The notes under the pieces: model-generated | What the model was told of the DNA's origin: nothing | Database searches by the model: none | The model's input: the letters and a program-made list of their open reading frames with translations, nothing else | In this document: positions 5,496 to 37,199 of the stretch, piece by piece | Position numbering within the stretch: position 1 is the first letter of the stretch | How the letters are laid out: every line of letters starts with the position of its first letter | Assembly (NCBI RefSeq): GCF_032444005.1 | Contig: NC_091282.1 | Location: forward strand, 447,640,001-447,704,000 | Length of the DNA stretch: 64,000 nucleotides | Reading direction: 5' to 3' | Source: Ranitomeya imitator | Taxonomy: Eukaryota | Program-made: the position numbers and the translations under genes

Positions 5496-5498
<3 letters not shown>

Positions 5499-5565: not shown

Positions 5566-5569
<4 letters not shown>

Positions 5570-6109
5570 CACTGTATTTTCTGGCATATAAGACTACTTT
5601 TTAACCCCTGAAAATCTTCTCAAAAGTCGGGTGTCGTCTTATACGCCGGGTGTCGTCTTATAGGGCAGATGTGGAGTAATCTGCGGTCGCCGCATATTGT
5701 GGGGGGAGCGGTCCCAATGACGAGGTGAGGGGGCGCCTCACCGAGAAGGTGTAAGTGAAGCAGAGGCAGAGAAGGAGATAATAGGATACAAGGGCGAGCC
5801 AGATGAGTGAAAGAGGAGTGTTTTTCTAGGCACAGCATCGCTCTCTCTCTTTTTTGAATACCCCTGGCATCCCAGACGCTGACAGTTTGCTTCACTTACA
5901 CTTTCCTGGTGAGGCGCTCCCTCAACTCGTCATCGGGACCACTCCCCCCCACTATATACGTCGACCGCAGATTGCTCCGCACCCACCCTATAAGACGACA
6001 CCCGGCATATAAGACAACTCCCGACTTTTGAGAAGATTTTATATTTTAACTGGAAAAGTTGGGGGTCGTATTATACGCCCAGTCGTCTTATACGCCGGAA
6101 AATACGGTG
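5570..6109. mobile_element. Tc1/mariner-superfamily MITE with Tc2 (MER104/Kanga)-like termini
   Basis: TA|CACTGTATTTTCTGGCATATAAGAC...GTCTTATACGCCGGAAAATACGGTG|TA; repeated TATAAGACG subterminal motifs. Family assignment is from recall of the terminal motif. Confidence 0.75.
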
Positions 6110-6125
6110 TATACATATATATATA

Positions 6126-7634
6126 CTATATGGTGGCCCGATTCTAACGCATCGGGTATTCTAGAATATGCATGGCCATGTAGTATATTGCCCAGCCATG
6201 TAGTATATTGCCCAGCCACGTAGTATATTGCCCAGCCACGTAGTATATTGCCCAGCCACTTAGTATATTGCCCAGTTACAAAGTATACAGCACAGAGCCA
6301 CGTAGTATATTGCCCAGTGACATAGTATATTGCTCAGTTACGTAGTATACAGCACAGAGCCACGTAGTATATTGCTCAGTGACATAGTATATTTCCCAGT
6401 TACGTAGTATATTGCACAGCGACATAGTATACAGCACAGAGCCACGTAGTATATTGCACAGCGACATAGTATACAGCACAGAGCCACGTAGTATATTGCC
6501 CAGTCACGTAGTATATTGCCCAGTCACGTAGTATATTGCCCAGTGACGTAGTATACATCACAGAGCCACGTAGTATATTGCCCAGCTACGTAGTATACAG
6601 CACAGAGCCACATAGTACATTGCCCAGTGACGTAGTATACAGCACAGAGCCACGTAGTATATTGCCCAGTGACGTAGTATATTGGCCAGCCACGTATGTC
6701 ACAGGTTAAAAAATAAACATACTCACCTAACGATCCGAGGGCCCCTTGTAGTTTAACATACTCACCATTCTGGTCGCTGCTCCTCAGCGTCCTGTCTCTC
6801 GGCCTCCTGGGATCCAACGGCGCTGTGTCGATGGGCGCGCGGCTGCCGCCATCTTCCGTTCCCAGGATGCTTTGCAAAGTTACCCAGATGACTTAGCAGT
6901 CTCGCGAGACCGCTAGGTCTTCTGGGTAATTTCGCAAAGCATCGCTGGGAAAGGAAGAAGGCAGCAGGCGCGAGCGCCTCAGTGGACAACGGAGGGTGAG
7001 CATAGCAGGTTTTTTGTTTTTTTAACATTACTTTTTTTACTATTGATGCTGCATGGGCAGCATCAATAGTAAAAGGTTGGGGACATACAGGGTTAATAGC
7101 GGCGGTAACGGAGTGTGTTACCCGCGGCATAACGCGGTCCGTTACCGCCGGCATTAACTCTTTGTTAGCGGTGACCGGAGGGGAGTATGGAGCGGGCGCC
7201 GGGGAGAATGACTGCGGGGAGTATGGAGCGGGCGCCGGGGACACTGCAGGGAGTATGGAGCGGGCACCGGGGACACTGCAGGGAGTGAGGAGTATGGAGC
7301 TGGCGCCGGGGACACTGCGGGGAGTATGGAGCGGGCGCCGGGGACACTGCGGGGAGTATGGAGCGGAGCGCCGGGGACACTGCGGGGAGCATGGAGCTGG
7401 CGCCAGGGACACTGTGGGGAGCGAGGAGTATGGAGCGGGCGCCGGCCACTGACTGCGGGGAGCAAGGAGCGGCCATTTTCTTCCGGACTGTGGCCGTCGC
7501 TGATTGCTCGTGGCTGTTTTGCGGCGACCAATCAGCGACTTGGATTTCCATGATAGACAGAGGCCACGACCAATGAATATCCGTGACAGACAGACAGAAG
7601 GACAGACGGAAGTACCCCTTAGACAATTATATAG
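6126..7634 (-). mobile_element. Non-autonomous Helitron, family B, copy 1
   Basis: Minus-strand 3' end CCCGAT-gcgttaga-ATCGGG hairpin then ccaccatATAG|T (CTAG in copy 2). The 5' end reads CTATATAATTGTCTAAGG then (GTCT)n next to a TA tract; the canonical 5' TC is not evident. Internal 20/24-bp and GC-rich about 30-bp arrays. Confidence 0.8.
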
Positions 7635-9146
7635 TGTATATATATATATATATATAATATTATATTATATGTTCATTCTTTGGATTCAGCCCATCTGAAA
7701 AAAGAATGTGCACATAAACTTAGAAGTGCATAGCTCCTATCTGAGGAGGACCTTGGGACCCGGATACCTCCAATCTGGCATAGAATTAAAGAGCTTGAAA
7801 CATATATAAAAAGTAACCATATTCCTTACTCTTTCTTAATCTTTCTTCTTCAATGGAGTGAAAATTTTTGAGGATATGTTGTTTTAGAGTACAAATAAAT
7901 TAGTCTGTAATACGTCTGTAACATAGGTACACTTCAATTGTGAAAGACAGAATCTTGAAGAAAAAAATCCAGAAAATCACATTGTATGATTTTTGCATAA
8001 TTATTTTGCCTGAAATAATTATATGATACAATAGAAAAAGAGAACTTAATATTTGGTACAGAAATCTTTGTATTCAATTAGAGGTCAGACGTTTCCTGTA
8101 GTTCTTGACCAAGTTTGCACACACTGCAGCAGGGATTTTGGCCCACTCCTCCATATACTGTAGATCTTCTCCAGATCTTTCAGGTTTCGGGACTGTCACT
8201 GGGCAATATTCAGTTTCAGCTCCCTCCAAAGATTTTCTATTGGGTTCAGTTCTGGAGACTGGCTAGGCCACTTCAGGACCTTAAAATGCTTCTTACAGAG
8301 ACACTCCTGAATTGCCCTGGCTGTGGGTTTTGGGTCATTGTCATGCTGTCGTTGTCATGCCATGACCCATCTTCAATGCTCTTACTGAGGGAAGAAAGTT
8401 GCCAAAATCTCACAATACATGACCCCATCAGCCCCCAAAGTATGATGTTTCCACACCATGCTTAACGGTTGGGACGGTGTTCTTGGGGTTGTACTTATCC
8501 TTCTTCCTCCAAACATGCGAGTGCAGTTAATGCCAAAAAGTTCTAATTTGGTCTCATTTGACCACATGAACCCCCATGCCTCCTCTGGATCATCCAGACG
8601 GTCATTCGTGAACCTCAAACGGGCCTAGACATGTGGTAGTGTGAGCAAGGGGTAATTTGGATCCATGATGGCGTAGTGTGTTACTAACGGTAATGTTTGA
8701 GACTGTGGTCCCAGCTCTCTTCAGGTCATTGACCAGGTCGTCCCATGTAGTTCTGGGCTGATTACTGACCTTTCTCAGAATCATCCTTACCCCACAAGGT
8801 GAAATCTTGCATGGAGCCCCAGAATTAGAAAGATTGACAGTCATCATGTGTTTTTTTCATTTTCTAATAGTTGTGCCAACAGTTGCATCCTCATCAAGCT
8901 GCTTGCCTATTGTCCTGTAACCCATCCCAGCCTTGTGCAGGTCTACAATTTTGTCCCTGGTGTCCTTAGACAGCTCTAGGTTTTGGCCATGGTGGAGAGG
9001 TTGAAGTGTGATTGACTGAGTGTATGGACACGTGTCTTTTATACAGGTAACGAGTTCAAAAAGCTGCAATTAAAGACCCGTAATGAATGCAGAGTAGGAG
9101 GGCTTCTTAAAGAAAAACTAACAGGTCTGTGAAAGCCAGAACTCTT

Positions 9147-9419
9147 AAATAATAATAAATAAATAATCTTTATTTTTATATAGCGCTAACATATTCCGCA
9201 GCGCTTTACAGTTTTGCACACATTATCATCACTGTCCCCAAATGGAGCTCACAATCTAAATTCCCTATCAGTATGTCTTTGGAATGTGGGAGGAAACCGG
9301 AGAACCTGGAGGAAACCCACGCAAACATGGAGAGAACATACAAACTCTTTGCAGATGTTGTCCTGGGTGGGATTAGAACCCAGGACCCCAGGGCTGCAAG
9401 GCTGCTGTTCTAACCACTG
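9147..9419 (-). mobile_element. tRNA-derived SINE with V-SINE-like core and L2-type tail
   Basis: Minus strand: A box (cagtggttag), B box (ggttctaatcc), core TGCGTGGGTTTCCTCCAGGTTCTCCGGTTTCCTCC, tail tgtaaagcgctgcggaatatgttagcgctatata followed by a (TAT)-rich end. Confidence 0.85.
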
Positions 9420-9540
9420 GTTGGTAGGTAAACAAATACTTTTCATGCAATAAAATGAAAATTAATTATTTAAAAATTATACAATGCATTCTCCTGGGTT
9501 TTAATTTTAGATTCCGTCTCTCATGGTTGAAGTGTACCAT

Positions 9541-9594
9541 GGCTGAACTGGATGGACAAATGTCTTTTTTCGGCCTTACTATGTTACTATGTTA
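9541..9594 (+). mobile_element. Extreme 5'-truncated CR1 (3' tail only)
   Basis: ggctgaactggatggacaaatgtctttttt cggccttactatgttactatgtt matches the 3' end of the CR1 at about 49774-49831, lacking only a 4-nt aact segment. Confidence 0.85.
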
Positions 9595-10021
9595 AGATAA
9601 AAATTACAGCCCTCTCCATTCTTTGTAGGTGTGAAAACTTGCAAAATCGGCAGTGTGTTAAATACTTATTTTCCCCACTGTATTTTTATATTCGGTATAT
9701 ATTGCATTTTTGCAATCATTTTGTTACTATATTCTGTATTTTTTTTGAATGACTACTGATTTGCATGCATTTATTTCAGGTTATAATGTTTTAGCATGCG
9801 GTAACACATTATCCTGTGTGGCACACTGACACAAGCTGCTGATAGGGCAAGTTCTAGTGTGAAATAACAGTAAGCTCATAGAGAGAGGTTGGGGGAGTAG
9901 GAACATTCCAGATCCCTATGCCAGACTGCCTACTTGTACCGAATCAAAGTTTGTATTATCGGGAATCCTAATTACCCAATCAAGGGGGAGTACCTTTTGA
10001 TCATGCCACGGTAAGGCCTAA

Positions 10022-10375
10022 GGCTAGGTTCATATTGCGTTAGTGCAACCCGTTTAGCGCTAGCGGGTTGCGCTAACGCAATGTTTTTAATGGGGCCGCG
10101 TCCCGGGGTCGCGGTAACGTCCCCGCTCTCGCAGATCCCCGATCTGCGAGAGCGGGGAACGGACCGCGGGCGCGCCTCAGACGCTGCAAGCAGCGTCCGC
10201 GGCGCGCCAGGAAACACCAGCGCGTCGCATAGCGCGTGCCGAACATGGCACGCGCTAGTGCTGCGCGTTCCCATTGCTGTGAATGGGCGCGCTAACGGAC
10301 GCGTTGCACGGCGTTAATTTCGCCGTGCAACACTGTCCGTTAGCGCTTTCCCATTAACGCAATGTGAACCCAGCC
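10022..10375. mobile_element. PIF/Harbinger-type MITE, GC-rich palindrome
   Basis: ggctaggttcatattgcgtt / aacgcaatgtgaacccagcc; flanks TAA and TTA. Confidence 0.8.
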
Positions 10376-10493
10376 TTACTGTGACGATTAAAAGATTGAT
10401 AGGATCTGCAGTTTCTCCCTGTTCAACAGTGTAGAAAACATGGCCCTGGAAATTAAACCAAGTCCTTTAATGGCTGCTGTAGAGGGCATCTTA

Positions 10494-10954
10494 GGCCCCT
10501 TTCACACATCAGGTTTTTGCCGTCAGGCACAATTCGGTGAATTTTGAAAAAAAAAAAAAAAGGAATCCGGCAAAAGTTGCCGCCGGATCTGTTTTTTTTT
10601 CTCATAGACTTGTATTTTCGCCAGATTGCGACGGATGGCCTCACGTTTCATCCGTTTTTTGCCGGATCCGTCGAAAATTAGTTTTCCGGCAACAGAGAAA
10701 ACGTACATAGGACTGTATTTTCTGTCCAGCGAAAAACGGTTGAACGCGAGGTGAAATTATGGAATCATGCATTTTCCATTCTGGTCTCTCCTCTTCTCCT
10801 CCAAGTCCAAACTCTATCCCCAGGTAAAAAAAAAAAATAAAAAATGGTCGGATCCGTCGCATCAGTTTTTCGCTATTTGCAACGGATCAGTTTTTTTTTC
10901 AAAATTCGCCAGATTGTGCCTGACAGCTAAAAAATCTGATGTGTGAAAGGGACC
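10494..10954. mobile_element. PIF/Harbinger-type MITE
   Basis: TTA|ggcccctttcacacatcag...ctgatgtgtgaaagggacc|TTA, 3-bp TSD. Confidence 0.85.
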
Positions 10955-11003
10955 TTAAGAGTCATTAAGATGTTAATATTTACAGGAACACAAAACACTG
11001 TAA

Positions 11004-11438
<435 letters not shown>

Positions 11439-11782
11439 TAAACTTAACATCTAACATTAGGCAGGCGTATTGGAACATAAGTCAAAGATAGATCAAATAG
11501 ATCACTGTTATTTTTGTAGGCTATAAATAGTTTTTTTTTTCAAGCACAAGGGGTCTGTATAGTTAATACAAGATAGTGAAAAATAGTGTTTTGTACTCAT
11601 AAGCCAATAATTCATTTAGTTTTTGACAATATTAATTAGTTTTGTTTCAAAGTTAAATACTGCAAATAAATAGAACGTTACATTCCTTAAGATATGGAAT
11701 GCAATAAAAGAATGTAATACTAAACATTCCACAAGGCTGCCATCAGTTACTAATGGTTTGGTTTCTGCAGTCTACAATATTA

Positions 11783-12298
11783 GGCTACTTTCACACATCA
11801 GGTTTTCAGTGTCAGGCTAAATCCGGCGAATGTTGGAAAAACTAGATCCGGAGCAGATTGTGAAAAACTGATGCGACGGATCTGTTTTTTTGACAGATCC
11901 AGCTAGCCTATCTAGATTATTGGCTAAAAAAAAAAATTGGAGCATGCTCAGTTTAAAAAAACGGATCAGGCCGCCGGATCCGCCTTTTTCCGGATTCAGC
12001 ACCTTCCGGCTCCCATAGGCTTCCATTCTAGAAACAGGCGGAAGCGCCGGCGCTTCAGGCTTTTTCGCCGGAGACAAAAAAACGTTGCAGTGGACGTTTT
12101 TTCAAGAAACCGGAAGCGGCAGAATTGCCGGATCCGGCGAAAACCGGACGAAACGCAATGTCATCCGGTGCAATCCGGCACTAATACAAGTCTGTGGGAA
12201 AAAAAACCTGATCCGGCAGCAACATTCGCCTGATCCGTTTTTTTTGAAAATTAGCCGGATTTAGCCTGACAGCGAACACTTGATGTGTGAAAGTAGCC
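11783..12298. mobile_element. PIF/Harbinger-type MITE
   Basis: TTA|ggctactttcacacatca...tgatgtgtgaaagtagcc|TTA, 3-bp TSD; internal ccggatccgg repeats. Confidence 0.88.
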
Positions 12299-12369
12299 TT
12301 AGGCTGAATTTTCAATTTGTAGAAAATGAGATTTTAAAACAACCTGCCTGGATACATCAATGCTTTTAA

Positions 12370-14015
12370 CCCCTTAGTGACAGAGCCAATTTGGTACTTA
12401 ATGATCAAGCCAATTTTTACAATTCTGGCCACTGTCACTTTATGAGGTTATAGCTCTGGAATGCTTCAACGGATCCCAGTGATTCTGAGACCGTTTTTTC
12501 TTGACATATTGTACTTCGCTAGGACTTGAGTTTATTTATGGAAAAAAATGGAAATTTGGCAAAAAAATTTAAAATGTTGCAATTTTCAAACTTTTAATCT
12601 TTGTACCCTTATATCAGAGTGGTGTCACACAAAATAGTTAATAAATAACATTTCCCACATGTCTACTTTACATCAGCACAATTTTGGAAACATAATTTTT
12701 TTTGTTAGGATGTTATAAGAGTGAAAATTTGACCAGCAATTTCTCATTTTTCCAACAAAATTTACAAAACCATTATTTTTAGGGACCACCTCATATTTGA
12801 AGTGAGTTTGGGGGGTCAATATAACAGAAAATACCCAAAAGTGACACCATTCTAAAAACTGCACCCTCAAGGTGCGTAAAACCACATTCAAGAAATGTAT
12901 TAACCCTTCAGGTGCTTCAAGAGAAAGAACTAAAGCAAAAAATTTACTTTGGAACCAATTTTTTTATTTTCACAAGGGTATCAGGAGAAAATGAACCACA
13001 AAATGTGTTGTGCAATTTCTCCTGAGTATGTGATACCTCGTATGTGGGGAAAAGACACTGTTCAGGTGCATGGCAGGTCTCAGAAGGGAAGGAGCACCGA
13101 TTGACCTTTTTTTTTTACCCAAAATTGGCTGGAATCACTGGGGGCGCCATGTCACGTTTGGAGACCCACTGATGTACTTAAACAGTGGAAACCCCCAATT
13201 CTAACTCCAACCCTAACCCCAACACACCCCTAACCCTAATCCCAACCCTAACCACAGCCCTAACACCAACACACCCCTAACCACAAACCTAACCCTAACA
13301 CACCCCCTAACCCTAATCCCTACCCTAACTTTAGCCCCCAACCCTGACTTTAGCCCCCAACCCTGACTTTAGCCCCCAACCCTGACTTTACCCCCAACCC
13401 TAACTTTAGCCCCAACCCTAGCCCAACCCCAACCCTAGCCTAACCCTAGCTCAACCGCAACCCTAACTCAACCCTAACCCCAGCTCTAGCCCAACCCTAA
13501 CTCTAACTTTAGCCCAACTCTAATCCTAATGGAAAAATAGAAATAAATATATATTTTTTATTTTATAATTTTTCCCTAACTAAGCGGTTGATAAAGGAGG
13601 GTTTTATTTACTATTTTTTTATTTTGATTACGGTTATAGGGTCTATCACAGTGATCAAAATGAACCAATAGGAAATATTTCCTACTGTTGCCGGGTGCCG
13701 TCCGGCAGAACTCGGCAGAGGCACTGAGCATGCGCCCGCCATTTTTTTCTGGTAAGAAGATGCCGGCTGCCAGGGGGACTTCACGGGGAGGGTTGCAGGA
13801 ACATCGGAGGTACCGGGGGAGGATCAGGGGACCCCATTTCTCCTCTTATGTGCGATTACATCAGGAGAAATTATATGGGAAATTGGACTTTTTTGTGGTC
13901 GCTGTTATTCCGTTAATCATGTTCTCTGGGGTCTCAGCTACCCCCGGGGAAATTACGTCTCGGGATGGGGGGGGCATAAGTACCCTTAAAAGGCGTATAG
14001 GTGATCGTTAAGGGT
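12370..14015 (-). mobile_element. Non-autonomous piggyBac-like element P1
   Basis: TTAA|ccccttag...taagggt|TTAA; reverse-complement homology to the terminal part of P2 and P3; no transposase. Confidence 0.8.
13201..13529. repeat. Degenerate telomere-like (CCCTAA)n array inside P1
   Basis: ccctaaccc / accctaac variants, with a 20-bp higher-order unit ccccaaccctgactttagcc repeated. Confidence 0.85.
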
Positions 14016-14329
14016 TTAAACTGCTTTGTGCGTTTCTACTGCCAAAATCGAAGGAGCTGGTGCGGGGAGTGTAGTGGGGATGTGATGCTACAGCTCATCT
14101 AATTCAAGTCCCTACACCAGAAATCTTACTTCAGTTCCCAAATGGACTAAGGTTTGTTGTGAGGCGCATGACACTTGTCAGATGTCCTTAACGAATCAGG
14201 AATGTCTCCAACATGCCCCCTCGCCAAGATCGGTATGACCACAGTGATACACACCATGTCACCAAACAGCACAGTGAGTATCTGTAGCCCTATACACAGG
14301 CCCACTCACTGATTCCAAGACTGTAGACA

Positions 14330-14601
14330 CCTGTGATGCTAGTTAGCGGACACACCTTGATGCAACGTCTGTTTTGTCACATTATTTTCAGGGGTACCAA
14401 CATTTCTGTCCCGGCCTATTTCATGAGTTTTATTTTTTTTTATTCTGTATAAGCATGGTTGAAAAGCAATATCTGACTTTCATTTGTTCATTTGCATAGA
14501 TCTTTTATTTATTATTACTTTTGTCAAATTCATGTTATTTCTGTGACATTGTGGGTTTTTCTGTCATTAAACAGGGGTACCAACAATTTTGACCACATGT
14601 G
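14330..14601. mobile_element. Tc1-like terminal fragment
   Basis: ggggtaccaaca motif repeated (IR/DR-like), ending ggtaccaacaattttgaccacatgtg|ta; start approximate. Confidence 0.5.
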
Positions 14602-14981
14602 TAATTTATTCATGGATGTACATCATTTGATGAATTCTCCACTCAGGGTTATTATAGTAATCTACATGTTCATACCTTTCCCTAATTATTTGTTGTATGT
14701 GGTGCAATACAGAAAAACTGTGAGACATCTACCGTAATTACACAGTTTCATATGTCCAGGCTGATTGAGGGTAACAAAATGTCTTGCTGTCCTTCCCAAA
14801 TCATAGCTAGACATAAAGGTATCCAGCTAAATATGGCAGGATATAAGATTCTGAAAGATCGTAATGAAATCTCAGCTTTACAGTGTTTCGATATGAAACG
14901 AAAAAGTTCCAGCAACAGACATCCAAAGTCAGGTTATTGAGTGGACGTTAAAAAACGTCATTTTACTAAAATAGTGAGTGA

Positions 14982-15018
14982 GGGATTACGCGTTTCGAAC
15001 GAAAGTGTTCTTAATCAT
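14982..15018 (-). ncRNA. Decayed minimal hammerhead ribozyme motif (Penelope-like relic)
   Basis: Minus strand AUGAUUA-A-GAAC(acuuuc)GUUC-GAAACGCGUA; core differs from CUGANGA at two positions. Confidence 0.5.
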
Positions 15019-15066
15019 TAGCATATCCTATGCTTTTGCACTGATCACAGATATGGTTATGATTAA

Positions 15067-15610
15067 AGGGAACCTGTCGTCCCGTTTTTTCAAGAAGAGC
15101 TAAAAATAGCGTTAAATAGGGGCAGAGCTGGGCTTTACATTAGTGTATTTTGGAGCCTTCATTCCCCACCTATGCTGCCGAAATACCTTTGTAAAGTCGC
15201 CGTTTTGGGCTGTCACTCACGCTGGTCAGGTCATATGGGCGTGGTGACAGCGCTGTTTCTCCCCCAGATCTCCGTTGGTGGCGTAGTGGTGTGCGCATGT
15301 CCAAGTGGCGAATCCACTGCGCAACTTCAAGGAAAATAGCGCGATCTGCGCTATTCAGCCGTTTATCGGTGGGCGCGGCCGTCTTTGTGAGGCCGCGCGT
15401 GCGCAGATGGTTCTTCTCGGCTTCCCGGGGCTTCAGGAAAATGGCCGCGGAATGCCGTGCGTGCGCAGATGGAGATCGCGGTGGCCATTTTCCTGCAGCC
15501 GAGATGCGAACTCGGCTTCAGGAAAATGGCCGTCGAGATCGCCATCTGCGCACGCGCGGCATCCCGCGGCCATTTTCTGGAAGCCGAGAAGAACCATCTG
15601 CGCACGCGCA
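15067..15610. mobile_element. Kolobok/T2-type MITE, left part only
   Basis: TTAA|agggaacctgtc terminus; internal palindrome with four AAAATGGCC(G) motifs; right terminus missing, fused to the telomere-like array of P2. Confidence 0.75.
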
Positions 15611-18600
15611 GGGCTAGGGTTAGGGCTAGGGTTAGGGTTGGGGCTAGGGTTAAGGCTACAGTTAGGGTTGGGGCTAAAGTTACGATTAGGGTTTAGATTA
15701 CATTTACAGTTGGGAATAGGGTTGGGATTAGGGTGAGGGGTGTGTTTGGATTAGGGTTTCAGTTATAATTGGGGGGTTTCCACTGTTTAGGCACATCAGG
15801 GGCTCTCCAAACGCGACATGGCGTCCGATCTCAATTCCAGCCAATTCTGCGTTGAAAAAGTAAAACAGTGCTTCTTCCCTTCCGAGCTCTCCCGTGTGCC
15901 CAAACAGGGGTTTACCCCAACATATGGGGTATCAGCGTACTCAGGACAAATAGGACAACAACTTTTGGTGTCCAATTTCTGCTGTTACCCTTGGGAAAAT
16001 ACAAAACTGGGGGCTAAAAAATAATTTTTGTGGGGAAAAAAAAGATTTTTTATTTTCACGGCTCTGCGTTACAAACTGTAGTGAAACATTTGGCGGTTCA
16101 AAGCTCTCACAACACATCTAGATGAGTTCCTTAGGGGGTCTAGTTTCCAAAATGGTGTCACTTGTGGGGGGTTTCTACTGTTTAGGTACATTAGGGGCTA
16201 TGCAAACGCAATGTGACACCTGCAGACCATTCCATCTAAGTCTGCATTCCAAGTGGAGCTCCTTCCCTTCCGAGCCCTCCCATGCTCCCAAACAGTGGTT
16301 CCCCCCCACATATGGGGTATCAGCGCACTCAGGACAAATTGGGCAACAAATTTTAGAGTCCAATTTCTCCTGTTACCCTCGGGAAAATATAAAACTAAGG
16401 GCTAAAAAAATAATTTTTGTGGGAAAAAATTTTTGTTTTATTTTTACGGCTCTGCATTATAAACTTCTGTGAAGCCCTTGGTGGGTCAAAGCGCTCAAAA
16501 CACATCTAGATAAGTTCCTTAGGGGGTCTACTTTCCAAAATGGTGTCACTTGTGGGGGGTTTCAATGTTTAGGCACATCAGTGGCTCTCCAAATGCAACA
16601 TGGCGTCTGTTGTGAATTCTGTTGTCAAGCTCCCTCCTGTGGTCGTGAATGGTACTTCGGCTGGTTCTGTCCATGGGCTTCCTCTGGTGGTTGTGAGTGG
16701 GGTTGCGGCTTCTGAGTTTCCTTCCACAGGTGACGAGGTTAATTCGTTAGCTGGCTGCTCTATTTAACTCCACCTAGATCATTGCTCCATGCCACCTGTC
16801 AATGTTCCAGTATTGGTCTTGTTCACTCCTGGATCGTTCTTGTGACATGTCTTCCCAGCAGAAGCTAAGTTCCTGCTTGTTTATCTCTGGTTTGTTGTTT
16901 TTCTGTCCAGCTTGCTATTTTGATTTTTGTCTTGCTTGCTGGAAGCCCTGGGACGCAGAGGGAGCGCCTCCGCACCGTGAGTCGGTGCGGAGGGTCTTTT
17001 TGCGCCCTCTGCGTGGTCTTTTTATAGTTTTTTTGTGCTGACCGCAAAGTTGCCTTTCCTATCCTCAGTCTGTTCAGTAAGTCGGGCCTCACTTTGCTAA
17101 ATCTATTTCATCTCTGTGTTTGTAATTTTCATCTTTACTCACAGTCATTATATGTGGGGGGCTGCCTTTTCCTTTGGGGAATTTCTCTGAGGCAAGGTAG
17201 GCTTTATTTTTCTATCTTCAGGGCTAGCTAGTTTCTTAGGCTGTGACGAGTTGCATAGGGAGCGTTAGGAGCAATCCACGGCTATTTCTAGTGTGTGTGA
17301 TAGGATTAGGGATTGCGGTCAGAAGAGTTCCCACGTCTCAGAGCTCGTCCTATATTATTAGTAACTATCAGGTCATTCCGTGTGCTCTTAACCACCAGGT
17401 CCATTATTGTCCTAACCACCAGGTCATAACAGGCGTCCCATCTCAATTCCTGTCAATTTTGCATTGAAAAGTCAAACGGCACTACTTCCCTTCCGAGCTC
17501 TCCCATGCGCTCAAACAGTGGTTTACCCCCACATATGGGGTATCAGCGTACTCAGGACAAATTGTACATAAACCTTTGGGGTCCAATTTCTTCTCTTACC
17601 CTTGGGAAAATAAAAAATTGGGGGTGAAAAGATAATTTTTGTGAAAAAATATGATTTTTATTTTTATGGTTCTGCATTATAAACTTCTGTGAAGCACACA
17701 CCACACCTCAAGATAAGTTCCTTAGGGGGTCTACTTTCCAAAATGGTGTCACTTGTGGGGGGTTTCAATGTTTAGGCACATCAGGGGCTCTCCAAACTCA
17801 ACATGGCGTCCCATCTCAATTCCTGTCAATTTTGCATTGAAAAGTCAAACGGCGCTCCTTCCCTTCCGAGCTCTCCCATGCGCCCAAACAGTGGTTTACC
17901 CCCACATATGGGGTATCGGTGTACTCAGGACAAATTATACAACAACTTTTGGGGTCCATTTTCTCCTGTTACCCTTGGTAAAATAAAACAAATTGGAGCT
18001 GAAGTAAATTTTTTGTGAAAAAAAGTTAAATGTTCATTTTTATTTAAACATTCCAAAAATTCCTGTGAAGCACCAGAAGGGTTAATAAACTTCTTGAATA
18101 TGGTTTTGAGCACCTTGAGGGGTGCAGTTTTTAGATTGGTGTCACACTTGGGTATTTTCTATCATATAGACCCCTCAAAATGACTTCAAATGAGATGTGG
18201 TCCCTAAAAAAAAATGGTGTTGTAAAAATGAGAAATTGCTGGTCAACTTTTAACCCTTATAACTCCCTAACAAAAAAAAATTTTGGTTCCAAAATTGTGC
18301 TGATGTAAAGTAGACATGTGGGAAATGTTACTTAAGTATTTTGTGTGACATATCTCTGTGATTTAATTGCATAAAAATTCAAAGTTGGAAAATTGCGAAA
18401 TTTTCATAATTTTCGCCAAATTTCCGTTTTTTTTCACAAATAAACGCAGGTACTAGCAAAGAATTTTTACCACTGTCATGAAGTACAATATGTCACGATA
18501 AAACAGTGTCAGAATCACTGGGATCCGTTGAAGCGTTCCAGAGTTATAACCTCATAAAGGGACAGTGGTCAGAATTGGAAAAATTGGCCCGGTCATTAAC

Positions 18601-18628
18601 ATGCAAACCACTCTTGGGGGTAAAGGGG
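15611..18628 (+). mobile_element. Non-autonomous piggyBac-like element P2 (left end lost)
   Basis: Starts in a TTAGGG-like array (15611-15757), has four about 390-bp internal units and ends gggggtaaagggg|TTAA like P3. Confidence 0.85.
16608..17431. mobile_element. Solo LTR nested in P2
   Basis: TGTTGTGA...TCATAACA termini with a 6-bp TSD ggcgtc (16602-16607, 17432-17437); the empty site catggcgtcccatctc is seen in neighbouring units; CAGGTG...TATTTAA promoter-like motifs. Confidence 0.85.
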
Positions 18629-18719
18629 TTAAGGTAATGCAATGTTGCAGCAACCAAAAAAAAACATAATTCTGTCTTTTTGACTTTTTTCTCGCTACGG
18701 CATTTAGCAATCCGGTTAA

Positions 18720-19345
18720 TCCTTTTTTTTTTTTTTTTTTATAGATCGGGCAATTTTGAACGCAGCTATACTAAATATGTGTTTGTTTGATTTTTCTTTT
18801 TTAGTATTTTATTTTGAATGAGGCAAAAGGGGGGTGATTTGAACTTTTATATTTTTATTTATTTATTTTTTTAAATATTTGGCATGCTTCAATAGTCTCC
18901 ATTGGTGACTAGAAGCTGCCATAACCCAATTGGCTCTGCTACATGCAGGGATAATCAGATCGTCTGCTTGTAGCAGAATACCTCACTTACTATGAGTGCC
19001 GACAACCGGGTGGCGCTCATAGCAATCTGGCAGTGACAACCATAGAGGTCTCCAGGAGACCTCTGGTTGTCATGCCAATCCATCGGTGACTTGCGATCAC
19101 GTGATGGGAGTCACCGATGGGTGAATTTCCGGCACGATTCCCAGAAATGCTGCAGTCTGTGTTTGACAGTGGCATTTAACGGGTGAACAGCCACGGGAGG
19201 TTAGCGATTCCTCCCACGGCTGTTAGCAGCACTTCAGCTGTTCAAAACAGCTGATGTACTGGAAAAGTAGCGGGCTCACTGACGGAGCCCGCACCAAACA
19301 GTGGGAGGCGTCCAATGACAGTATTGGTCGGTAAGGAGATAAACC
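18720..19345. mobile_element. Terminal fragment of another TTAA-type non-autonomous DNA element
   Basis: GC-rich palindromic segments and a degenerate terminus gtattggtcggtaaggagataa resembling ...aaggggttaa; boundaries approximate. Confidence 0.4.
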
Positions 19346-20579
19346 GTTTATGGCATGTAACACAACCAAGCAATGAAAAAATAGGAACCTCCTCACCAAA
19401 TTGATGTTCATTCACGTAGGGGGAAACTATGTCCATCCAGGTGAGAATCAATCCAAGAGATACGGGATATAGTATGGCCATATATATCCCTATAGGGACT
19501 GCAAAAGCTACCACCCTGACATCGGCAGTCCACAGCTAGTCCTACCTAATAAGGAGGCCCTGCACTCTCCCTCTGCATCTCGACGCATTCCTTCCCTCGA
19601 TTAAGTCTTCAGGGAACCTGTAGCACAAGTAGGGTCTCTATGGTAGTTAGTGCAGAGTAAAATGGGTCTCTCCTGACTGTCTAATCCTGGAGGATTCTGG
19701 GCCTCCAACTTATGCCAAAGGTCATATACCATAGTTGGAGCTCCTTTTCCCTTTTTTAAGCAGCACTTCTTTTTCATGTTAGTGATCTAGTTAAGGTTAC
19801 ATTTTAATATAAACTCTAACATTTTGCTGTATTGTACTTGACATTGTAACATCCTATGGATTTTGAGGTGGGCATTTATTCCCACTTCTTCAACATTGTA
19901 TAAGGTGCCATCCACTGAATAAATATATGCAATATTTATATTTTAATTTTTACATTTGTTATACTCTGTCTACTGTTTACCTCCAAAATAAAGCAGACAC
20001 CCACCAAAAGAATTGCACTTACCAAACCCTAAACAAAAGCGTTGGCAAGTGAATGGGATCTCGGGCATAAATCTGCATCGCTTCATTCCACAGCGGTTGG
20101 CTCCCCCTGCTGGCTGGAAGCAGTATCACTCGAGTGGAGTTGGTGAGAGCTGAGTGATACCGAAGTAGATCTTATATTTCAAGCCTTCTCCAAAAAGGCT
20201 GAAAATTCCTGCTAGCACTAGGAAGACCTGACCGTTTGGCTTTAATACTGCAAATAGATTCATTATGTGAAAAATATTGGTTGATCAGTACGACCATAAT
20301 CACAAGAACAGGTACTCAGGCATGCTCATTGATGATGAGTATTGTGTTTTAAACTTTAAAAGATGGCCGTGTTCTCTATCATTCAGTATCACAGACAATG
20401 AATGGCGCGGCATTCAAATAGGGGACACTGAGCACTTGTTCTCATGAGCACTGACCTCCGCAATCAGATGCCGTATTGCAGATATGCAGTAGAGTTGTCA
20501 CATAAACACGACTTCTTTAAGAAAATGAATATATAGGTTTTTTATATGTATTTTAGTACAACATATTTACCTTGTATAA

Positions 20580-20777
<198 letters not shown>

Positions 20778-22186
20778 TAAATGCATTTATTTAAATACGA
20801 CTTAGTGGTATTCCCATCTCTAAGATCGTATCCTACTCTGTAGTAACTGATAATATTAGCAAATACCTCCAATTAGAAATGTAGTATAGTTCTTCTGATT
20901 TGCTGTGTTGCTGACCAAGTGCAGTGCTTTGCAGTAGCTTAGATATCCATGGTTACAATCATTGACATAGTAACAGTTGTTTAGTTGTTAGATAACTACT
21001 TAGATAGCTACTGCAATGCCCTGCACATGGGGTAAGCGACGTAGTGAATCATAAGAACTGTACTACATTTGTAATTAGAGATATTTGCTAATATTATTAT
21101 TACACCTACTACATATTGGGATAGGCTATTAGAGATATGAATACCACTACTAAAGGCGTTTCTTCTAAAAACAGCAAAACGCTTGTCCACGGTTTGTGTT
21201 ACTGAAACTCAGCCCCATTTAGCTTAGTAGAGCTGAGCTGCAGTACCGCATGTCATACATATCAAGAAAGCTGCCTTGTTTTGTATTTGTGTTTCTTCCC
21301 TAAATGACATTTTATTTGGTTACCTTCAGTCTTTGTCATCCTATGACTATATTGGAAAAGCAAGGATGATTGAGGGGGCCATGTGCCATCCACAAGGATG
21401 GGGGTTATATAGATACCAGGATGAAGGACATACATATGATTTGTAAGACAGGCACTGGCATTATAAGACAGACCCCCATTTAACATAAAAAATAGTAAAT
21501 GAAAGAATATACACTGGCGCTATAACTGTAGATGTGAGCTACACAAGTGCCGCTGGTACTCCTGTCAGATGATGTGCCCAATCCGACAAACAAGAATAAA
21601 AGACCAGTATAAACGAATAAAGAGTACCGCGCTACAAGTGACTAGGGCTAAGTGCCGTCCGTGATCCCAGCGTAACGACTCAAAAACTCCCTATGGTCGC
21701 AGATGGCAACTAATACTAACTGACCAATTTGCCAATTTGCATATACTTAGAAGAGGAGAGGTGTATTGACCTTCTGTGTGCGTAGTGCAACTAGTTGTGG
21801 CTCTCCTGCTGAGCTTGTAATATTATACTGGTACACCGTATTAGTAGATGGTAACTAGTAATATTCCGTTACCTACTGCGTGCCGCCGTATGGGGATCCC
21901 GGAGCTGCTGGGCTACTTGCGTCGGATTCAGCTGGCTGGTCAGTACATCTAGAGGTCCGCTCTGTTGGAAGGCTGATTCCGTCTGCTTGGAAGGTAAGTA
22001 TGCGGGTGCTAGCCGCGGTCGATATCGGCGGCTTTGGGTACTGCAGGTGAGGACTGTGGTAGCTACGTGTAGCGCCAGAGACGTTCCGGCCGGAGGCGTC
22101 CCTGGATACACGTGAGAAAATGGCCGACACTGCGAAGCAGTGAGTGACGTCACTGGCCTATGGTGCCTCAATGGGGTCAAATCTAA

Positions 22187-22224
22187 CCTACGCGTTTCAA
22201 AGTGACACGCACTCCTTTATCAGG
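22187..22224 (-). ncRNA. Mirror hammerhead copy with G8>A core mutation
   Basis: Minus strand reads C-CUGAUAA-AGGAGUGCGUGUCACUUU-GAAACGCGUAGG; variant base at 22218. Confidence 0.6.
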
Positions 22225-22236
22225 ATCCCTTCAACT

Positions 22237-22275
22237 CCCTGATGAAGGAGTGCGTGTCACTTTGAAACGCGTAGG
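22237..22275 (+). ncRNA. Minimal type I hammerhead ribozyme motif
   Basis: CC-CUGAUGA(22239-45)-stem II AGGAGUG/CACUUU-GAAAC GC GUA-GG; palindromic ACGCGU stem III typical of dimer-dependent Penelope hammerheads; predicted cut after A22273; stem I is very short. Confidence 0.7.
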
Positions 22276-22869
22276 TTATATTTGACCCCATTGAGGCTCC
22301 ATAGGCCAGTGACGTCACTCACTGCTTCGCAGTGTCGGCCATTTTCTCACGTGTATCCAGGGACGCCTCCGGCCGGGACTTCTCTGGCGCTACACGTAGC
22401 TACCACAGTCCTCACCTGCAGTACCCAAAGCCGCCGATATCGACCGCGGCTAGCACCCGCATACTTACCTTCCAAGCAGACGGAATCAGCCTTCCAACAG
22501 TGCGGACCTCTAGATGTACTGACCAGCCAGCTGAATCCGACGCAAGTAGCCCAGCAGCTCCGGGATCCCCATACGGCGGCACGCAGTAGGTAACGGAATA
22601 TTACTAGTTACCATCTACTAATGCGGTGTACCAGTATAATATTACAAGCTCAGCAGGAGAGCCACAACTAGTTGCACTACGCACACAGAAGGTCAATACA
22701 CCTCTCCTCTTCTAAGTATATGCAAATTGGCAAATTGGTCAGTTAGTATTAGTTGCCATCTGCGACCATAGGGAGTTTTTGAGTCGTTACGCTGGGATCA
22801 CGGACGGCACTTAGCCCTAGTCACTTGTAGCGCAGTACTCTTTATTCGTTTATACTAACATAAAAAATA

Positions 22870-22956
22870 ATTTAATTTAATTTTTTTCTCTTTTTCTTCA
22901 CCAAATTTGGGGGTGGGTCTTATAATCAGGTGCGTCTTATAAAGCGAAAAATACGG
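22870..22956. mobile_element. Tc2-like MITE right end; left end probably at about 21430-21494, split by the foldback insertion
   Basis: gtcttataaagcgaaaaatacgg|ta terminus; degenerate tataagac motifs left of the TSD. Confidence 0.45.
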
Positions 22957-23033
22957 TAGAAGGAAATACTTGTATAGTCCTCTAGAGTACTCTATTTGGG
23001 TATGCCCATCTGATATACCTGTAGCATATCTGC

Positions 23034-23187
23034 NNNNNNNNNNNNNNNNNNNNNNNNNNNNNNNNNNNNNNNNNNNNNNNNNNNNNNNNNNNNNNNNNNN
23101 NNNNNNNNNNNNNNNNNNNNNNNNNNNNNNNNNNNNNNNNNNNNNNNNNNNNNNNNNNNNNNNNNNNNNNNNNNNNNNNNNNNNNNN
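23034..23187. other. Assembly gap (154 N)
   Basis: Run of N. Confidence 0.99.
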
Positions 23188-23394: not shown

Positions 23395-23955
23395 AGGAGA
23401 TTTCCCAATAAGAAACTTAATTTTTAAATTGATTTTAAGCAATACATATTTGAATAATAATAATTTACACAATTGGATGTGTTTAAAAAAATGTTCCAGT
23501 GCTGAGATAATCTTATAATGTGCCCCTGCTGTGTGCTGTGTAATGGCCGTGTCTGACTGTGCAGAAATGTGGTCTGATCATACGTACAACATATCCTGGG
23601 CAGGGGGAGAGCAAAAGAGAGGATACAGATAGGACAGCAGGGGATCGCAGCTGATACTCTTTGTGAGATAAAGCATTTCTCTGCCTGCTTTAAAAAAGTT
23701 TTATGGCAAAGAATTATATGCAATCCTGTGCTGTTCTGTCTGTTTACTCTTTTGCATCCTCCCCTGCCCAGTAGATGTGGTGTGATCATACCATGTCCCT
23801 GTACGGTCAGACACGGCCATTACACAATACATAACAGGGGCACATTTAGAAGATTATCTCCGCACAGGAACATTTTTTTTAAGCGCATCCAGTTGTGGAA
23901 CTTATTATTCCATGATCTAGAGATTAAAATTAACTTTGTTCGTGGGACAACCCCT
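23395..23955. mobile_element. Kolobok/T2-type MITE
   Basis: TTAA|aggagatttccca...tgggacaacccct|TTAA with long internal inverted arms. Confidence 0.7.
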
Positions 23956-24116: not shown

Positions 24117-25678
<1,562 letters not shown>

Positions 25679-26042: not shown

Positions 26043-27679
<1,637 letters not shown>

Positions 27680-35413: not shown

Positions 35414-35704
<291 letters not shown>

Positions 35705-37199
35705 TGACATCATCTGGTGTAGATTCAGACCCCATTGAGGCACTTTCCTGTATCTATAAATGAAAAAATGTATTTTTATATGTAAACGTGATTTTATAGC
35801 CATGATATATATTTTTCTAATATACTTGGTGTGAATTCCCTTCTGGCCTTGAAGAACTCTGCTTGTAGTCATCAAATGGTAACCTTCATTGTTGACTTCT
35901 TATGGCTACAAATCTTTCCTGCTCATGTGATGGATACAAAGCTGCATAGCTCTGTGTTTGTCTTTTAACAAGCTGAATACGTTTCTGCTCTGCCCTGAAG
36001 TCACAGATTGGCTGCAGTGGTCACATGTGGTACACAGCACGTTATCACTGCAAACAAGTAAACATGGACCAGTGGGGAGGACCACCGCTACAGAGCTGGC
36101 ACAGCAGTGAGAGTACACATTCTTTTAATGTACAAAAAAAAAAAGAGAAAAAAGTCACTAATCATTCACACAACTTGAAAGGATAGCGGCACACGTCTCA
36201 CAATTACTCGGGAACTCTGAGTGCTTCACCAAATGCAAGATTTTTATGAAACTTCAAAGAGTTCCACTAAAAACTGCTTTTATTGCAGAATCATTACAAA
36301 ATGAATGCAGGTGCAAGAAACAGACAAAATACATTGTTTTATTTTATCACATTTCACCCATTGGGAAAAATTTGTCAAGAGCTCAGAAATCCCCTTTTAA
36401 TTTTTCATTATACAATTTATAATCTGTATTTTCTACATCCAGAAAAAAAATAGTAATATGTGTGGCAATAGAAAAAAAAAATATTATTTTATGTTACAAA
36501 GCTTTCTAACATCAGTTGTAAAATCCACCAAGAATATCTGGGTGACTTGTAGATATATACTGCAGCAACATGCTCCTTACATAATATTCCATCAGACTCC
36601 AGTTGGCAGAGCAGCGATAGCAGATAAAGTTCAGCAGTCGGTATGGTAAAGGTTGCCTAACTGCTCAGAGCACTAATATTGCTAGGCTATGTAAGGTCCG
36701 CCATCATTCAGTCCCCGCTATGGTATTGTAAGGTAAAATGTCAGCTTCTTGGGGTCTGTAGTTTCTGTTTACCTTTCAATAAATTAGTCAAGTTTTCAGA
36801 ATCACCCGTTCCCCAGGTTGGTTGGTTTTTATTTTTTTTATTTTTATTTTTTTTAATTCTTTATTAACCCATTTCAAGTCCATCGCTACATGTCAGTCGC
36901 TGCTCTCAGCCTGTTATTGTGTGCAGTGCTGATGTCACGTTGACAGCACTGCAGCTAATCGGTAAGCTCAGCAGCTCCGTGCTTCACGTTTGGCACTATT
37001 GCTGAGCTCAGTCATTGGTTGCAGTGCTATCGTCATGACGTCAGCGCTGCAGACAATAACAAACGCCAGGAGCAATGGTGGAGACATGCTGCTGGACCTG
37101 GGAAGGGTGAGTAAGGCTCTTAGGTTTTTTTTAGTTTTGTTTTTTAAATAAACTGCTGCTGGGAGGCAGGGGTTTTCAGAAACTGGAAAACCCTTTTAA

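What the first reader, a model, noticed from the sequence alone, without database searches (positions are those of the whole stretch)
21481..22869. 1.25-kb near-perfect palindrome with a hammerhead ribozyme at its apex, inside JAK2 intron 12
Seen: 619-bp inverted arms (about 8 mismatches counted by eye), a 13-nt loop, a one-sided 111-bp extension and an exact 14-bp TSD. The arm tips carry CUGAUGA...GAAACGCGUA. Established: Penelope-like elements often form inverted pseudo-LTR structures, and their pLTRs carry minimal hammerheads with a palindromic stem III that work as dimers. Inference: this is a young non-coding Penelope-type insertion in which the inversion point falls at the ribozyme, so the JAK2 pre-mRNA would contain a very long dsRNA stem capped by a ribozyme.
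Basis: partly seen in the sequence, partly recalled or inferred. Interest (0 to 1): 0.8.

Follow-up and report, generated by a model that had tools for sequence, protein, structure and literature searches.

The report
Head-to-head Penelope-type insertion in JAK2 intron
A young, protein-free mobile element of the frog hammerhead-ribozyme (Penelope/retrozyme) kind inserted into JAK2 intron 12 as two head-to-head copies; this gives a real 1.25-kb palindrome, but both ribozyme copies at its centre are broken, so it is an ordinary example of a known kind.

Summary
Two 619-nt inverted arms differ at 8 positions. They have a 13-nt spacer, a one-sided 111-nt extension and an exact 14-bp duplication of the target site. 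The element lies between the JAK2 exons that match human exons 12 and 13.

Contigs from public runs show that the arms belong to a repeated family, which also occurs in a second species. They also show uninterrupted copies of the host repeat, which serve as paralogous empty sites.

Other family copies continue upstream of CUGAUGA with ...GGGCGGUAA-CC. That sequence pairs with GGUUAU just after the GUA cleavage site. The family therefore carries a complete amphibian/Penelope-type hammerhead: a 6-bp helix II with an unpaired A, and a 1-bp helix III with the palindromic CGCG loop.

In this copy both arms stop 1-2 nt upstream of the core, so the helix I 5' strand is missing. The antisense copy also reads CUGAUAA (G8 to A). 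Rfam gives no hammerhead hit. In the JAK2 transcript the motif would be paired inside the 619-bp stem, not capping it.

Head-to-head copies, a one-sided tail, an AT-rich target and proposed self-priming are all published Penelope hallmarks. The scan has already noted dozens of such hammerhead palindromes elsewhere in this genome (unchecked notes). Verdict: a new member of a known kind, of low to moderate interest.

The parts
21481..21494 (.). Target-site duplication, left copy (TAACATAAAAAATA; 13 of 14 letters are A/T)
   Evidence: Exact 14-nt direct repeat. In other copies of the host repeat this sequence runs straight on into the right-flank sequence (loose ends 'behind 21490-21493' in X1, X2, X4 and X10).
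21495..21605 (-). One-sided 111-nt extension: the 3' terminal part (tail) of the left copy, missing from the right copy
   Evidence: Family contigs cover 21509-21655 without a break, so this stretch is family sequence and not flank (table 8). Other copies diverge before 21509 into an A-rich tail variant (table 7).
21606..22224 (-). Left arm: family copy with its sense on the - strand (antisense to JAK2)
   Evidence: 550 contigs of run X1 were laid on the 1,031-nt stretch examined, most of which is this arm and its tail, at 80-100% identity.
22175..22224 (-). Hammerhead-like motif of the left copy, read on the - strand. The core reads CUGAUAA (G8 to A) and the helix I 5' strand is replaced by the spacer.
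   Evidence: Mismatch 22218/22244. The spacer's reverse complement can pair with the 3' strand at -11.1 kcal/mol, but the core is mutated.
22225..22237 (.). 13-nt spacer (ATCCCTTCAACTC). It is not family sequence, except perhaps the last C.
   Evidence: Other family copies read ...GGGCGGTAA before 22237 (table 7).
22237..22289 (+). 5'-truncated hammerhead motif of the right copy, in the JAK2 sense. It comprises CC; CUGAUGA 22239-22245; unpaired A 22246; helix II 22247-22263; GAAA 22264-22267; CGCG loop 22268-22271; U-A 22272-22273, with the predicted cut after 22273; and the helix I 3' strand 22274-22289.
   Evidence: Sequence, pattern search, helix II fold and helix I duplex tests. No Rfam hit.
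22238..22855 (+). Right arm: family copy with its sense on the + strand. It lacks the last 111 nt of the 3' end.
22856..22869 (.). Target-site duplication, right copy
21370..21480 (.). Left half of the high-copy host repeat into which the element inserted
   Evidence: Summed contig depth rises from about 15 (single copy, 21300-21369) to 4,000-22,000 (table 2).
22870..22975 (.). Right half of the host repeat. It contains GGGTCTTATAA, which pairs with the left half.
   Evidence: Inverted repeats I10 and I13. Loose-end consensus ...CTTTTTTCTTCACCAAATTTG from uninterrupted copies.
20616..20722 (+). JAK2 exon matching human exon 12 (...[13 protein letters not shown]), followed by a GTATGT donor
   Evidence: The human numbering comes from established knowledge that K539 lies in exon 12.
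24117..24251 (+). JAK2 exon matching human exon 13 (start of the pseudokinase domain)
   Evidence: PDB JAK2 JH2 chains, E 9e-20.

Best explanation
Positions 21495-22855 are one retrotransposition event of a repeated, non-coding, hammerhead-bearing family. The family is of the amphibian 'non-LTR retrozyme' / Penelope pLTR-only kind, presumably mobilised in trans by a Penelope-like RT with a GIY-YIG endonuclease. The element inserted into an A/T-rich site of a high-copy host repeat in JAK2 intron 12 and made a 14-bp target-site duplication.

The likeliest sequence of events is as follows. First-strand cDNA was primed at the left nick and copied the RNA from its 3' tail (21495) to a point 1-2 nt upstream of the hammerhead core. 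The polymerase then turned back onto the new cDNA (self-priming or template switch), leaving a 13-nt spacer, and copied 619 nt back. That strand was joined to the other target end 111 nt short of the start. On this model the arms were identical at birth, and the 8 differences (1.3%) accumulated afterwards.

Because the turn-back lies inside the ribozyme, both copies lack the helix I 5' strand, and the antisense copy also has G8 changed to A. Neither copy is expected to self-cleave. In the JAK2 pre-mRNA the element should fold into a 619-bp duplex with the dead ribozyme letters inside the stem.

Shown here: the anatomy, the family membership, the insertion boundaries, the complete hammerhead in other copies and the truncation in this one. 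Inferred: the helper enzyme, the self-priming step and the behaviour of the RNA.
For: Anatomy: arms, spacer, extension and TSD.

Repeated family: 550 and 506 contigs in two DNA runs at 80-100% identity. Summed depth on the arm is 240-1,400 against about 15 on the single-copy flank. The family is also present in a second species (X4) and in a run guessed to be RNA (X10).

Paralogous empty sites: uninterrupted host-repeat copies run from ...AAAAATA straight into the right-flank sequence (table 7).

Complete hammerhead in the family: contigs in X1, X2 and X4 continue upstream as ...GGGCGGTAA|CC-CTGATGA. That strand pairs with the 3' strand GGUUAUAUUUGACCCC at -13.8 kcal/mol, which only 4 in 1,000 shuffles reach. 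This copy's own + strand upstream gives only -2.7.

Motif architecture matches published descriptions. Helix II has 6 bp with an unpaired nucleotide at its 5' base, and helix III is palindromic (PMC4209133). Amphibian type I hammerheads have a single-base-pair helix III capped by a palindromic tetraloop (PMC7229834).

Published Penelope hallmarks include head-to-head inverted 5'-truncated copies, a tail at one end only, AT-rich targets, pLTRs sufficient in trans and a self-priming model (PMC8557442; PMC3846280). Retrozymes have been shown to derive from Penelope pLTRs in frogs (bioRxiv 10.64898/2026.07.22.740005).

The element has no coding capacity: the longest ORFs are 103 aa with non-ATG starts. 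It is young: 1.3% arm divergence and CpG o/e 0.88 against 0.57 in the flanks.

One species-B contig skips 21596-22065 (table 5). This points to a shorter variant of about 270 nt made of the tail plus the hammerhead module, which is the size of typical amphibian retrozymes.
Against: No RT/GIY-YIG parent sharing this sequence was found or could be searched. The only RT genes in the window are LINEs of CR1/L2 and APE type.

Rfam hammerhead models do not match this copy, so the ribozyme identity rests on hand analysis plus 30-nt loose-end consensuses with only 0.7-0.9 agreement.

The 111-nt extension is longer than the published 30-40-bp tail.

The spacer shows no microhomology that would explain self-priming. 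The even split of transitions and transversions (4:4) does not exclude two different RNA templates.

No listed contig was shown to bridge the spacer at this locus, and all runs are k-mer contigs, which cannot separate the two arms.
Confidence: 0.8

Rival explanations
1. One reading: an active (dimeric) hammerhead sits at the apex, so the JAK2 pre-mRNA carries a long dsRNA stem capped by a working ribozyme that could cut the intron.
For: The + strand copy keeps every conserved core letter (CUGAUGA, GAAA, U-A), a 6-bp helix II and the palindromic ACGCGU that could form a dimeric helix III. A Penelope hammerhead with only a 2-bp helix I has been described in D. virilis (PMC4209133).
Against: The helix I 5' strand is gone: 2 of about 7 nt are left, and the duplex is -2.7 kcal/mol against -13.8 for the family strand. 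No Rfam hammerhead hit appears at E<=10 on 86 nt. The partner copy on the other strand is CUGAUAA. In the MFE fold of the transcript, all motif letters pair with the other arm. Even intact Penelope mini-hammerheads cleave poorly in vitro.
Confidence: 0.05
2. The same Penelope-type insertion, but made by two separate target-primed reverse transcriptions, one from each nick (twin priming on two RNA molecules). On this model the arms were never identical.
For: There is no microhomology at the spacer for a snap-back. The transition:transversion ratio is 4:4. At 22164 the left-arm letter is shared by some other family contigs: 128 of 1,041 depth units (table 3). One X2 contig shows another inverted junction in which the sense copy starts at 22239, which hints at a preferred 5' end near the core (tables 5 and 5c).
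Against: Two independent 5' truncations would have to stop within 13 nt of each other on a template of at least 760 nt; my rough estimate of the chance is about 2-4%. At 21839 and 22085 the left-arm letters are private or nearly so against the family, as expected for change after insertion (table 3).
Confidence: 0.25
3. Assembly fold-back artefact: only one arm exists in the animal.
For: A 154-N gap starts only 165 bp after the right TSD copy. Penelope inverted structures are known to trouble assemblies (PMC8557442). No listed contig bridges the spacer.
Against: A fold-back would mirror the flank as well. Instead the right arm stops 111 nt short and is followed by a direct copy of the TSD, then by the genuine continuation of the host repeat, as seen in uninterrupted paralogues. 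The arms differ at 8 sites.
Confidence: 0.03
4. A fold-back or long-TIR DNA transposon, or a later inverted duplication of a single insertion.
For: The long, nearly perfect inverted repeat flanked by a direct repeat.
Against: The two termini differ (GTAAATGAAAG... against ...CGTTTATAC) because of the 111-nt one-sided extension. As far as I know, no DNA transposon superfamily makes 14-bp TSDs. The family carries a hammerhead and has a 3'-to-5' abundance pattern with variable 5' ends. A later duplication would not leave the TSD flanking the whole structure.
Confidence: 0.03

Closest known systems
Penelope-like element insertions with inverted pLTRs (Arkhipova et al. 2013, PMC3846280; Craig et al. 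2021, PMC8557442)
   Same: Head-to-head inverted 5'-truncated copies. An extra 'tail' at the 3' end of only one of the inverted copies. A TSD around the whole unit. An AT-rich target. No poly(A). A hammerhead in the repeat. pLTR sequence alone is enough for mobilisation in trans.
   Different: There is no ORF and no direct pLTR pair here, only the two inverted copies. The tail is 111 nt rather than 30-40. The TSD is 14 bp rather than the 8-10 bp reported in rotifers. Linkage to an RT/GIY-YIG parent was not tested.
Amphibian non-LTR retrozymes / newt satellite-2-type hammerhead repeats (Cervera & de la Pena 2020, PMC7229834; Li, Clavereau & Pollet 2026, bioRxiv 10.64898/2026.07.22.740005)
   Same: A non-coding repeat with a type I hammerhead whose helix III is one base pair capped by a palindromic tetraloop. 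Dispersed monomer copies are common in frog introns. These repeats are related to Penelope pLTRs.
   Different: Retrozymes are defined by tandem units and circular RNAs. This locus has no direct tandem, its unit (at least 743 nt) is longer than the amphibian average (316 nt), and no circular RNA evidence was available.
Penelope minimal hammerheads (Cervera & de la Pena 2014, PMC4209133)
   Same: A 6-bp helix II with an unpaired nucleotide at its 5' base. A palindromic helix III that implies dimeric action. Pairs of motifs on opposite strands, 100-700 bp apart, have been reported.
   Different: Here the two opposed motifs are only 13 nt apart and both are cut off before helix I. One has a G8A core change.

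Membership tests
Hammerhead ribozyme, type I (amphibian/Penelope class) | Conserved core C3-U4-G5-A6-N7-G8-A9, G12-A13-A14, A15.1-U16.1, H17 | tested here: met
   The + strand copy has CUGAUGA at 22239-22245 and GAAA-CGCG-U-A at 22264-22273. The - strand copy fails this feature: it reads CUGAUAA, G8 to A.
Hammerhead ribozyme, type I (amphibian/Penelope class) | Helix II hairpin between the two core boxes | tested here: met
   RNAfold gives a 6-bp stem GGAGUG/CACUUU with 2 G-U pairs, at -3.0 kcal/mol, with an unpaired A at its 5' base. This matches the description of Penelope mini-hammerheads.
Hammerhead ribozyme, type I (amphibian/Penelope class) | Short helix III with a palindromic loop, allowing a dimeric helix III | tested here: met
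   A15.1-U16.1 closes the CGCG loop, and ACGCGU is self-complementary. This matches the description of HHR_Amex1.
Hammerhead ribozyme, type I (amphibian/Penelope class) | Helix I of about 4-6 bp formed by the strand just upstream of CUGAUGA and the strand after the cleavage site | tested here: not met
   This locus keeps only CC of the 5' strand, and the duplex is -2.7 kcal/mol. Other family copies have GGUAACC pairing with GGUUAU plus GGGG/CCCC, at -13.8 kcal/mol, which 0.4% of shuffles reach. The - strand spacer gives -11.1, but there the core is mutated.
Hammerhead ribozyme, type I (amphibian/Penelope class) | Score against the Rfam hammerhead covariance models | tested here: not met
   No hammerhead family is listed at gathering score on the whole window, nor at E<=10 on 1.7 kb or on 86 nt.
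Hammerhead ribozyme, type I (amphibian/Penelope class) | Self-cleavage after H17 | not testable with these tools
   This needs in vitro transcription or RNA-end mapping. Only k-mer contigs were available, not raw RNA reads.
Penelope-type (PLE-mobilised) insertion | Head-to-head inverted 5'-truncated copy with the 3' ends outward | tested here: met
   Both arms start at the hammerhead (the 5' side in ribozyme sense) at the centre and run outward. The pattern is described.
Penelope-type (PLE-mobilised) insertion | Tail extension at one end only | tested here: met
   A 111-nt extension is present on the left copy only. It is family sequence and longer than the published 30-40 bp.
Penelope-type (PLE-mobilised) insertion | TSD around the whole unit, AT-rich target, no poly(A) | tested here: met
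   Exact 14-bp TSD with 13 of 14 letters A/T. Paralogous empty sites are seen. The 3' end is ...UUCAUUUAC, without an A run.
Penelope-type (PLE-mobilised) insertion | Sequence shared with the pLTR of an element that encodes RT plus a GIY-YIG endonuclease | not testable with these tools
   No eukaryotic genome or repeat library could be searched. There is no PLE in the window: the RTs at 47429-49725 and 59653-62230 are LINEs.
Non-LTR retrozyme | Tandem units bounded by hammerheads, giving circular RNA monomers | tested here: not met
   This locus has no direct tandem. The arrangement elsewhere in the family, and any circular RNA, could not be tested.
TIR / fold-back DNA transposon | Matching inverted termini at both ends and a superfamily-typical TSD | tested here: not met
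   The termini differ because of the one-sided extension. The TSD is 14 bp.

The most novel reading that the evidence does not exclude
The turn-back is not at a random truncation point. In this frog, Penelope-type reverse transcription may preferentially fold back or end at the 5' edge of the hammerhead core. Possible reasons are that the template RNA ends there, or that the cDNA of the ribozyme, with its palindromic ACGCGT and helix II hairpin, promotes self-priming. The ribozyme module would then double as the structural signal that creates the family's palindromic insertions. Hints: both arms stop 1-2 nt before CUGAUGA. One other contig shows an inverted junction with the sense copy starting at 22239. 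The scan holds 49 unchecked notes of 'palindrome + hammerhead' insertions in this genome.
Probability: 0.12. Interest if true: 0.6.

Novelty: new member of a known kind. Interest (0 to 1): 0.25.

Why it matters
As a single locus it matters little. It is a clean, datable example of the head-to-head products of Penelope-type retrotransposition, and its complete anatomy (TSD, one-sided tail, spacer) is compatible with the self-priming model proposed for these elements but does not decide between it and twin priming.

It places about 1.2 kb of near-perfect inverted repeat in an intron of an essential kinase gene. The JAK2 pre-mRNA should therefore carry a long nuclear dsRNA, a likely ADAR/Dicer substrate, and the DNA carries a long palindrome with a short spacer, a structure generally regarded as fragile. 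The locus could be used to test how frogs tolerate such structures.

The wider question is whether fold-backs cluster at the hammerhead across the genome. That can be answered from the assembly and would bear on the still unsolved Penelope replication cycle.

Tried and rejected
Rfam was run three ways. It returned only hairpin-type microRNA look-alikes caused by the palindrome, such as mir-9223 at 45 bits, below its gathering score. I rejected these as artefacts of the inverted repeat.

blastn of the long arm against the window found no second copy. There is only a 24-nt match at 35720-35743 (E 0.011), which I did not pursue.

blastn of the flanks against the window found no uninterrupted host-repeat copy in the window. 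The empty-site evidence therefore comes only from the contig loose ends.

A search for a Penelope helper in the window failed. The RT at 47429-49725 is a CR1/L2-like LINE, and 59653-62230 is an APE-type LINE.

The exon-12 peptide gave no PDB hit, so that exon's identity rests on the motif match and on its position before the confirmed exon 13.

The search of earlier findings by sequence was blank.

RNA evidence is weak. No run is on record as RNA, and X10 (a guessed RNA run) holds diverged family contigs only, so nothing can be said about expression, editing or small RNAs from this locus.

Helix I was tested as two separate strands only.

Full report
**Observation.** The stretch is as described. 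The repeat finder reports arms 21606-22224 and 22238-22856, each 619 nt and 99% complementary, with 13 nt between them. It also reports an exact 14-nt direct repeat TAACATAAAAAATA at 21481-21494 and 22856-22869. A script counts 8 mismatches between the arms, 4 transitions and 4 transversions. It confirms the spacer ATCCCTTCAACTC and the 111-nt extension (21495-21605) that only the left side has. The element is 51% G+C with CpG o/e 0.88, against 43% and 0.57 in the flanks, which fits a young insert. It has no coding capacity: the longest ORFs are 103 aa with non-ATG starts.

**Gene context.** On the + strand, an exon encoding ...[13 protein letters not shown] ends near 20722. The next exon (24117-24251) matches the human JAK2 pseudokinase domain at E 9e-20. 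The exon with YGVCVCGDE, which holds the V617 equivalent, lies near 29.0 kb. From established knowledge, K539 is in human exon 12 and V617 in exon 14. The element is therefore in intron 12.

**It is a true insertion of a repeated family.** I laid the contigs of two DNA runs from one sample (X1, X2), one run from another species (X4) and one run guessed to be RNA (X10) on 21300-22330.
- The left flank 21300-21369 has a depth of about 15, which is single copy.
- Positions 21370-21509 belong to a repeat with a summed depth of 4,000-22,000.
- The arm has a summed depth of 240-1,400, from hundreds of contigs at 80-100% identity. The tail (21510-21579) and the hammerhead-side module (22035-22209, peaking above 10,000 at 22070-22104) are more abundant than the middle.
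- Contigs from uninterrupted copies of the host repeat leave the stretch at 21490-21493 and continue as ...TTTTTTCTTCACCAAATTTG. That is the sequence found after the right TSD copy in the window.

These contigs are paralogous empty sites, and they fix the insertion boundaries. A contig from the other species skips 21596-22065. This suggests a shorter relative of about 270 nt made of the tail plus the hammerhead module, the size of ordinary amphibian retrozymes.

**The hammerhead.** On the + strand the right arm reads C-CUGAUGA-A-GGAGUG-CGUGU-CACUUU-GAAA-CGCG-U-A, followed by GGUUAUAUUUGACCCC. The pattern occurs once in the window, against 0.14 expected by chance.
- Helix II folds as 6 bp with an unpaired A at its 5' base.
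- Helix III is one A-U pair closing the palindromic tetraloop CGCG.
- This is the architecture published for Penelope mini-hammerheads, with a long helix II, an unpaired base at its 5' end and a palindromic helix III that acts in dimers (PMC4209133). It also matches amphibian type I hammerheads (PMC7229834).

No Rfam hammerhead model matches this copy, at gathering score or at E<=10, on 1.7 kb or on 86 nt. The contigs explain why. In X1, X2 and X4, other family copies continue upstream of 22237 as ...GGGCGGTAA, which gives GGUAACC directly before CUGAUGA. That strand pairs with GGUUAU, and GGGG pairs with CCCC further out, at -13.8 kcal/mol; 4 of 1,000 shuffles reach that value. This locus's own upstream letters give only -2.7.

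The family therefore has a complete type I hammerhead, and here both copies are cut off 1-2 nt before the core. The - strand copy can pair its spacer-derived upstream letters with the 3' strand (-11.1 kcal/mol), but its core is CUGAUAA. From established ribozyme knowledge, G8 is a catalytic residue and A8 is tolerated only together with U3. Neither copy is expected to cleave. In the predicted fold of the + strand RNA (-1327.5 kcal/mol), every motif letter is paired with the other arm, and the loop is the 13-nt non-family spacer. The picture of a dsRNA stem capped by a ribozyme therefore does not hold. A 619-bp intronic duplex does.

**Mechanism.** In ribozyme sense, both arms begin at the centre and run outward, so the 3' ends face the flanks and the 5' ends meet. 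This is the most common Penelope arrangement. The published features are:
- an inverted 5'-truncated copy abutting the element;
- a tail present at the 3' end of only one of the inverted copies;
- a TSD around the whole unit;
- AT-rich targets;
- pLTRs that suffice in trans.

The authors propose self-priming to explain the palindromic junctions (PMC3846280; PMC8557442). I favour one template and a turn-back (about 0.55 of the total) over two independent primings (about 0.25). Two independent 5' truncations ending within 13 nt of each other on a template of at least 760 nt would be a coincidence of a few percent. In addition, at 21839 and 22085 the left-arm letters are private or nearly so against the family (table 3).

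Some points count against self-priming. The spacer shows no microhomology. At 22164 the left-arm letter is shared with other copies. One X2 contig shows another inverted junction whose sense copy starts at 22239, which hints at a preferred end near the core.

If the arms were identical at birth, 1.3% divergence implies a few million years at commonly assumed vertebrate rates. This is an inference, and the rate was not measured here.

**Rivals.** An assembly fold-back is very unlikely. The right arm stops 111 nt short and is followed by a direct TSD copy and the genuine continuation of the host repeat, not by a mirror of the left flank. The arms also differ at 8 sites. The nearby 154-N run (23034-23187) and the lack of a listed contig bridging the spacer are the only points in its favour. 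A TIR DNA transposon is excluded by the unequal termini and the 14-bp TSD. A later inverted duplication would not leave the TSD around the whole structure.

**Comparison and novelty.** Every feature has been published for Penelope-like elements and their non-autonomous, hammerhead-bearing derivatives. A 2026 preprint shows that frog retrozymes derive from Penelope pLTRs and that about 43% of copies lie in introns. The scan's own notes, which are AI-written and which I did not check, list 116 'Penelope hammerhead' and 49 'palindrome hammerhead' findings in this same genome, which earlier notes name as a poison frog. Several are palindromes that fold back at a hammerhead and have 14-18-bp TSDs. 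The scan has therefore found this class before, on other DNA. Membership in the Penelope-mobilised class is supported by structure, but the RT/GIY-YIG link could not be tested. Membership as a working hammerhead fails on helix I and on the Rfam score.

I rate this a new member of a known kind, with interest 0.25. The one open and testable point is whether fold-backs cluster at the ribozyme's 5' edge across the genome.

Noticed in passing
window 21370-21494 and 22856-22975: The element sits inside a very high-copy repeat: summed contig depth is up to about 22,000 against about 15 for single-copy sequence. The repeat's two halves are themselves inverted (TTATAAGACAGACCCCCA / TGGGGGTGGGTCTTATAA), so it looks like a MITE.
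   Followed up: partly
window 22070-22104: A 35-nt piece of the arm (AGCGCCAGAGACGTTCCGGCCGGAGGCGTCCCTGG) is about 10-40 times more abundant in the contigs than the rest of the arm. Other repeats join the family only from 22066 onward, so this is a module shared with more numerous hammerhead families.
   Followed up: no
window 21990-22052, + strand: In the JAK2 sense, the left arm carries two consensus splice donors (AAG|GTAAGT near 21995 and CAG|GTGAGG near 22047). The arms also hold a CRE palindrome (TGACGTCA), GCCATTTT and an E-box (CACGTG), which looks promoter-like. Cryptic exon use was not examined.
   Followed up: no
window 35720-35743: A 24-nt match (92%) to the arm segment just after the hammerhead (TAGATT.AGACCCCATTGAGGCAC) lies about 80 nt downstream of the JAK2 exon at 35485-35637. 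It may be a tiny family remnant or chance (E 0.011).
   Followed up: no
window 47429-49725 (+) and 59653-62230 (-): Two LINE reverse-transcriptase genes. The first is CR1/L2-like, in two abutting frames. The second has an APE endonuclease plus RT. Neither is Penelope-like.
   Followed up: partly
window 26669-27343 (-): A Tc1/mariner (Sleeping Beauty-like) transposase DNA-binding domain fragment in a JAK2 intron.
   Followed up: no
window 23034-23187: A run of 154 N lies 165 bp downstream of the insertion.
   Followed up: no
window 20803-21149 and 23426-23936: Two further nested inverted-repeat structures in the same intron (arms of 35-67 nt, 74-89% complementary). They are probably older MITE-type inserts.
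   Followed up: no
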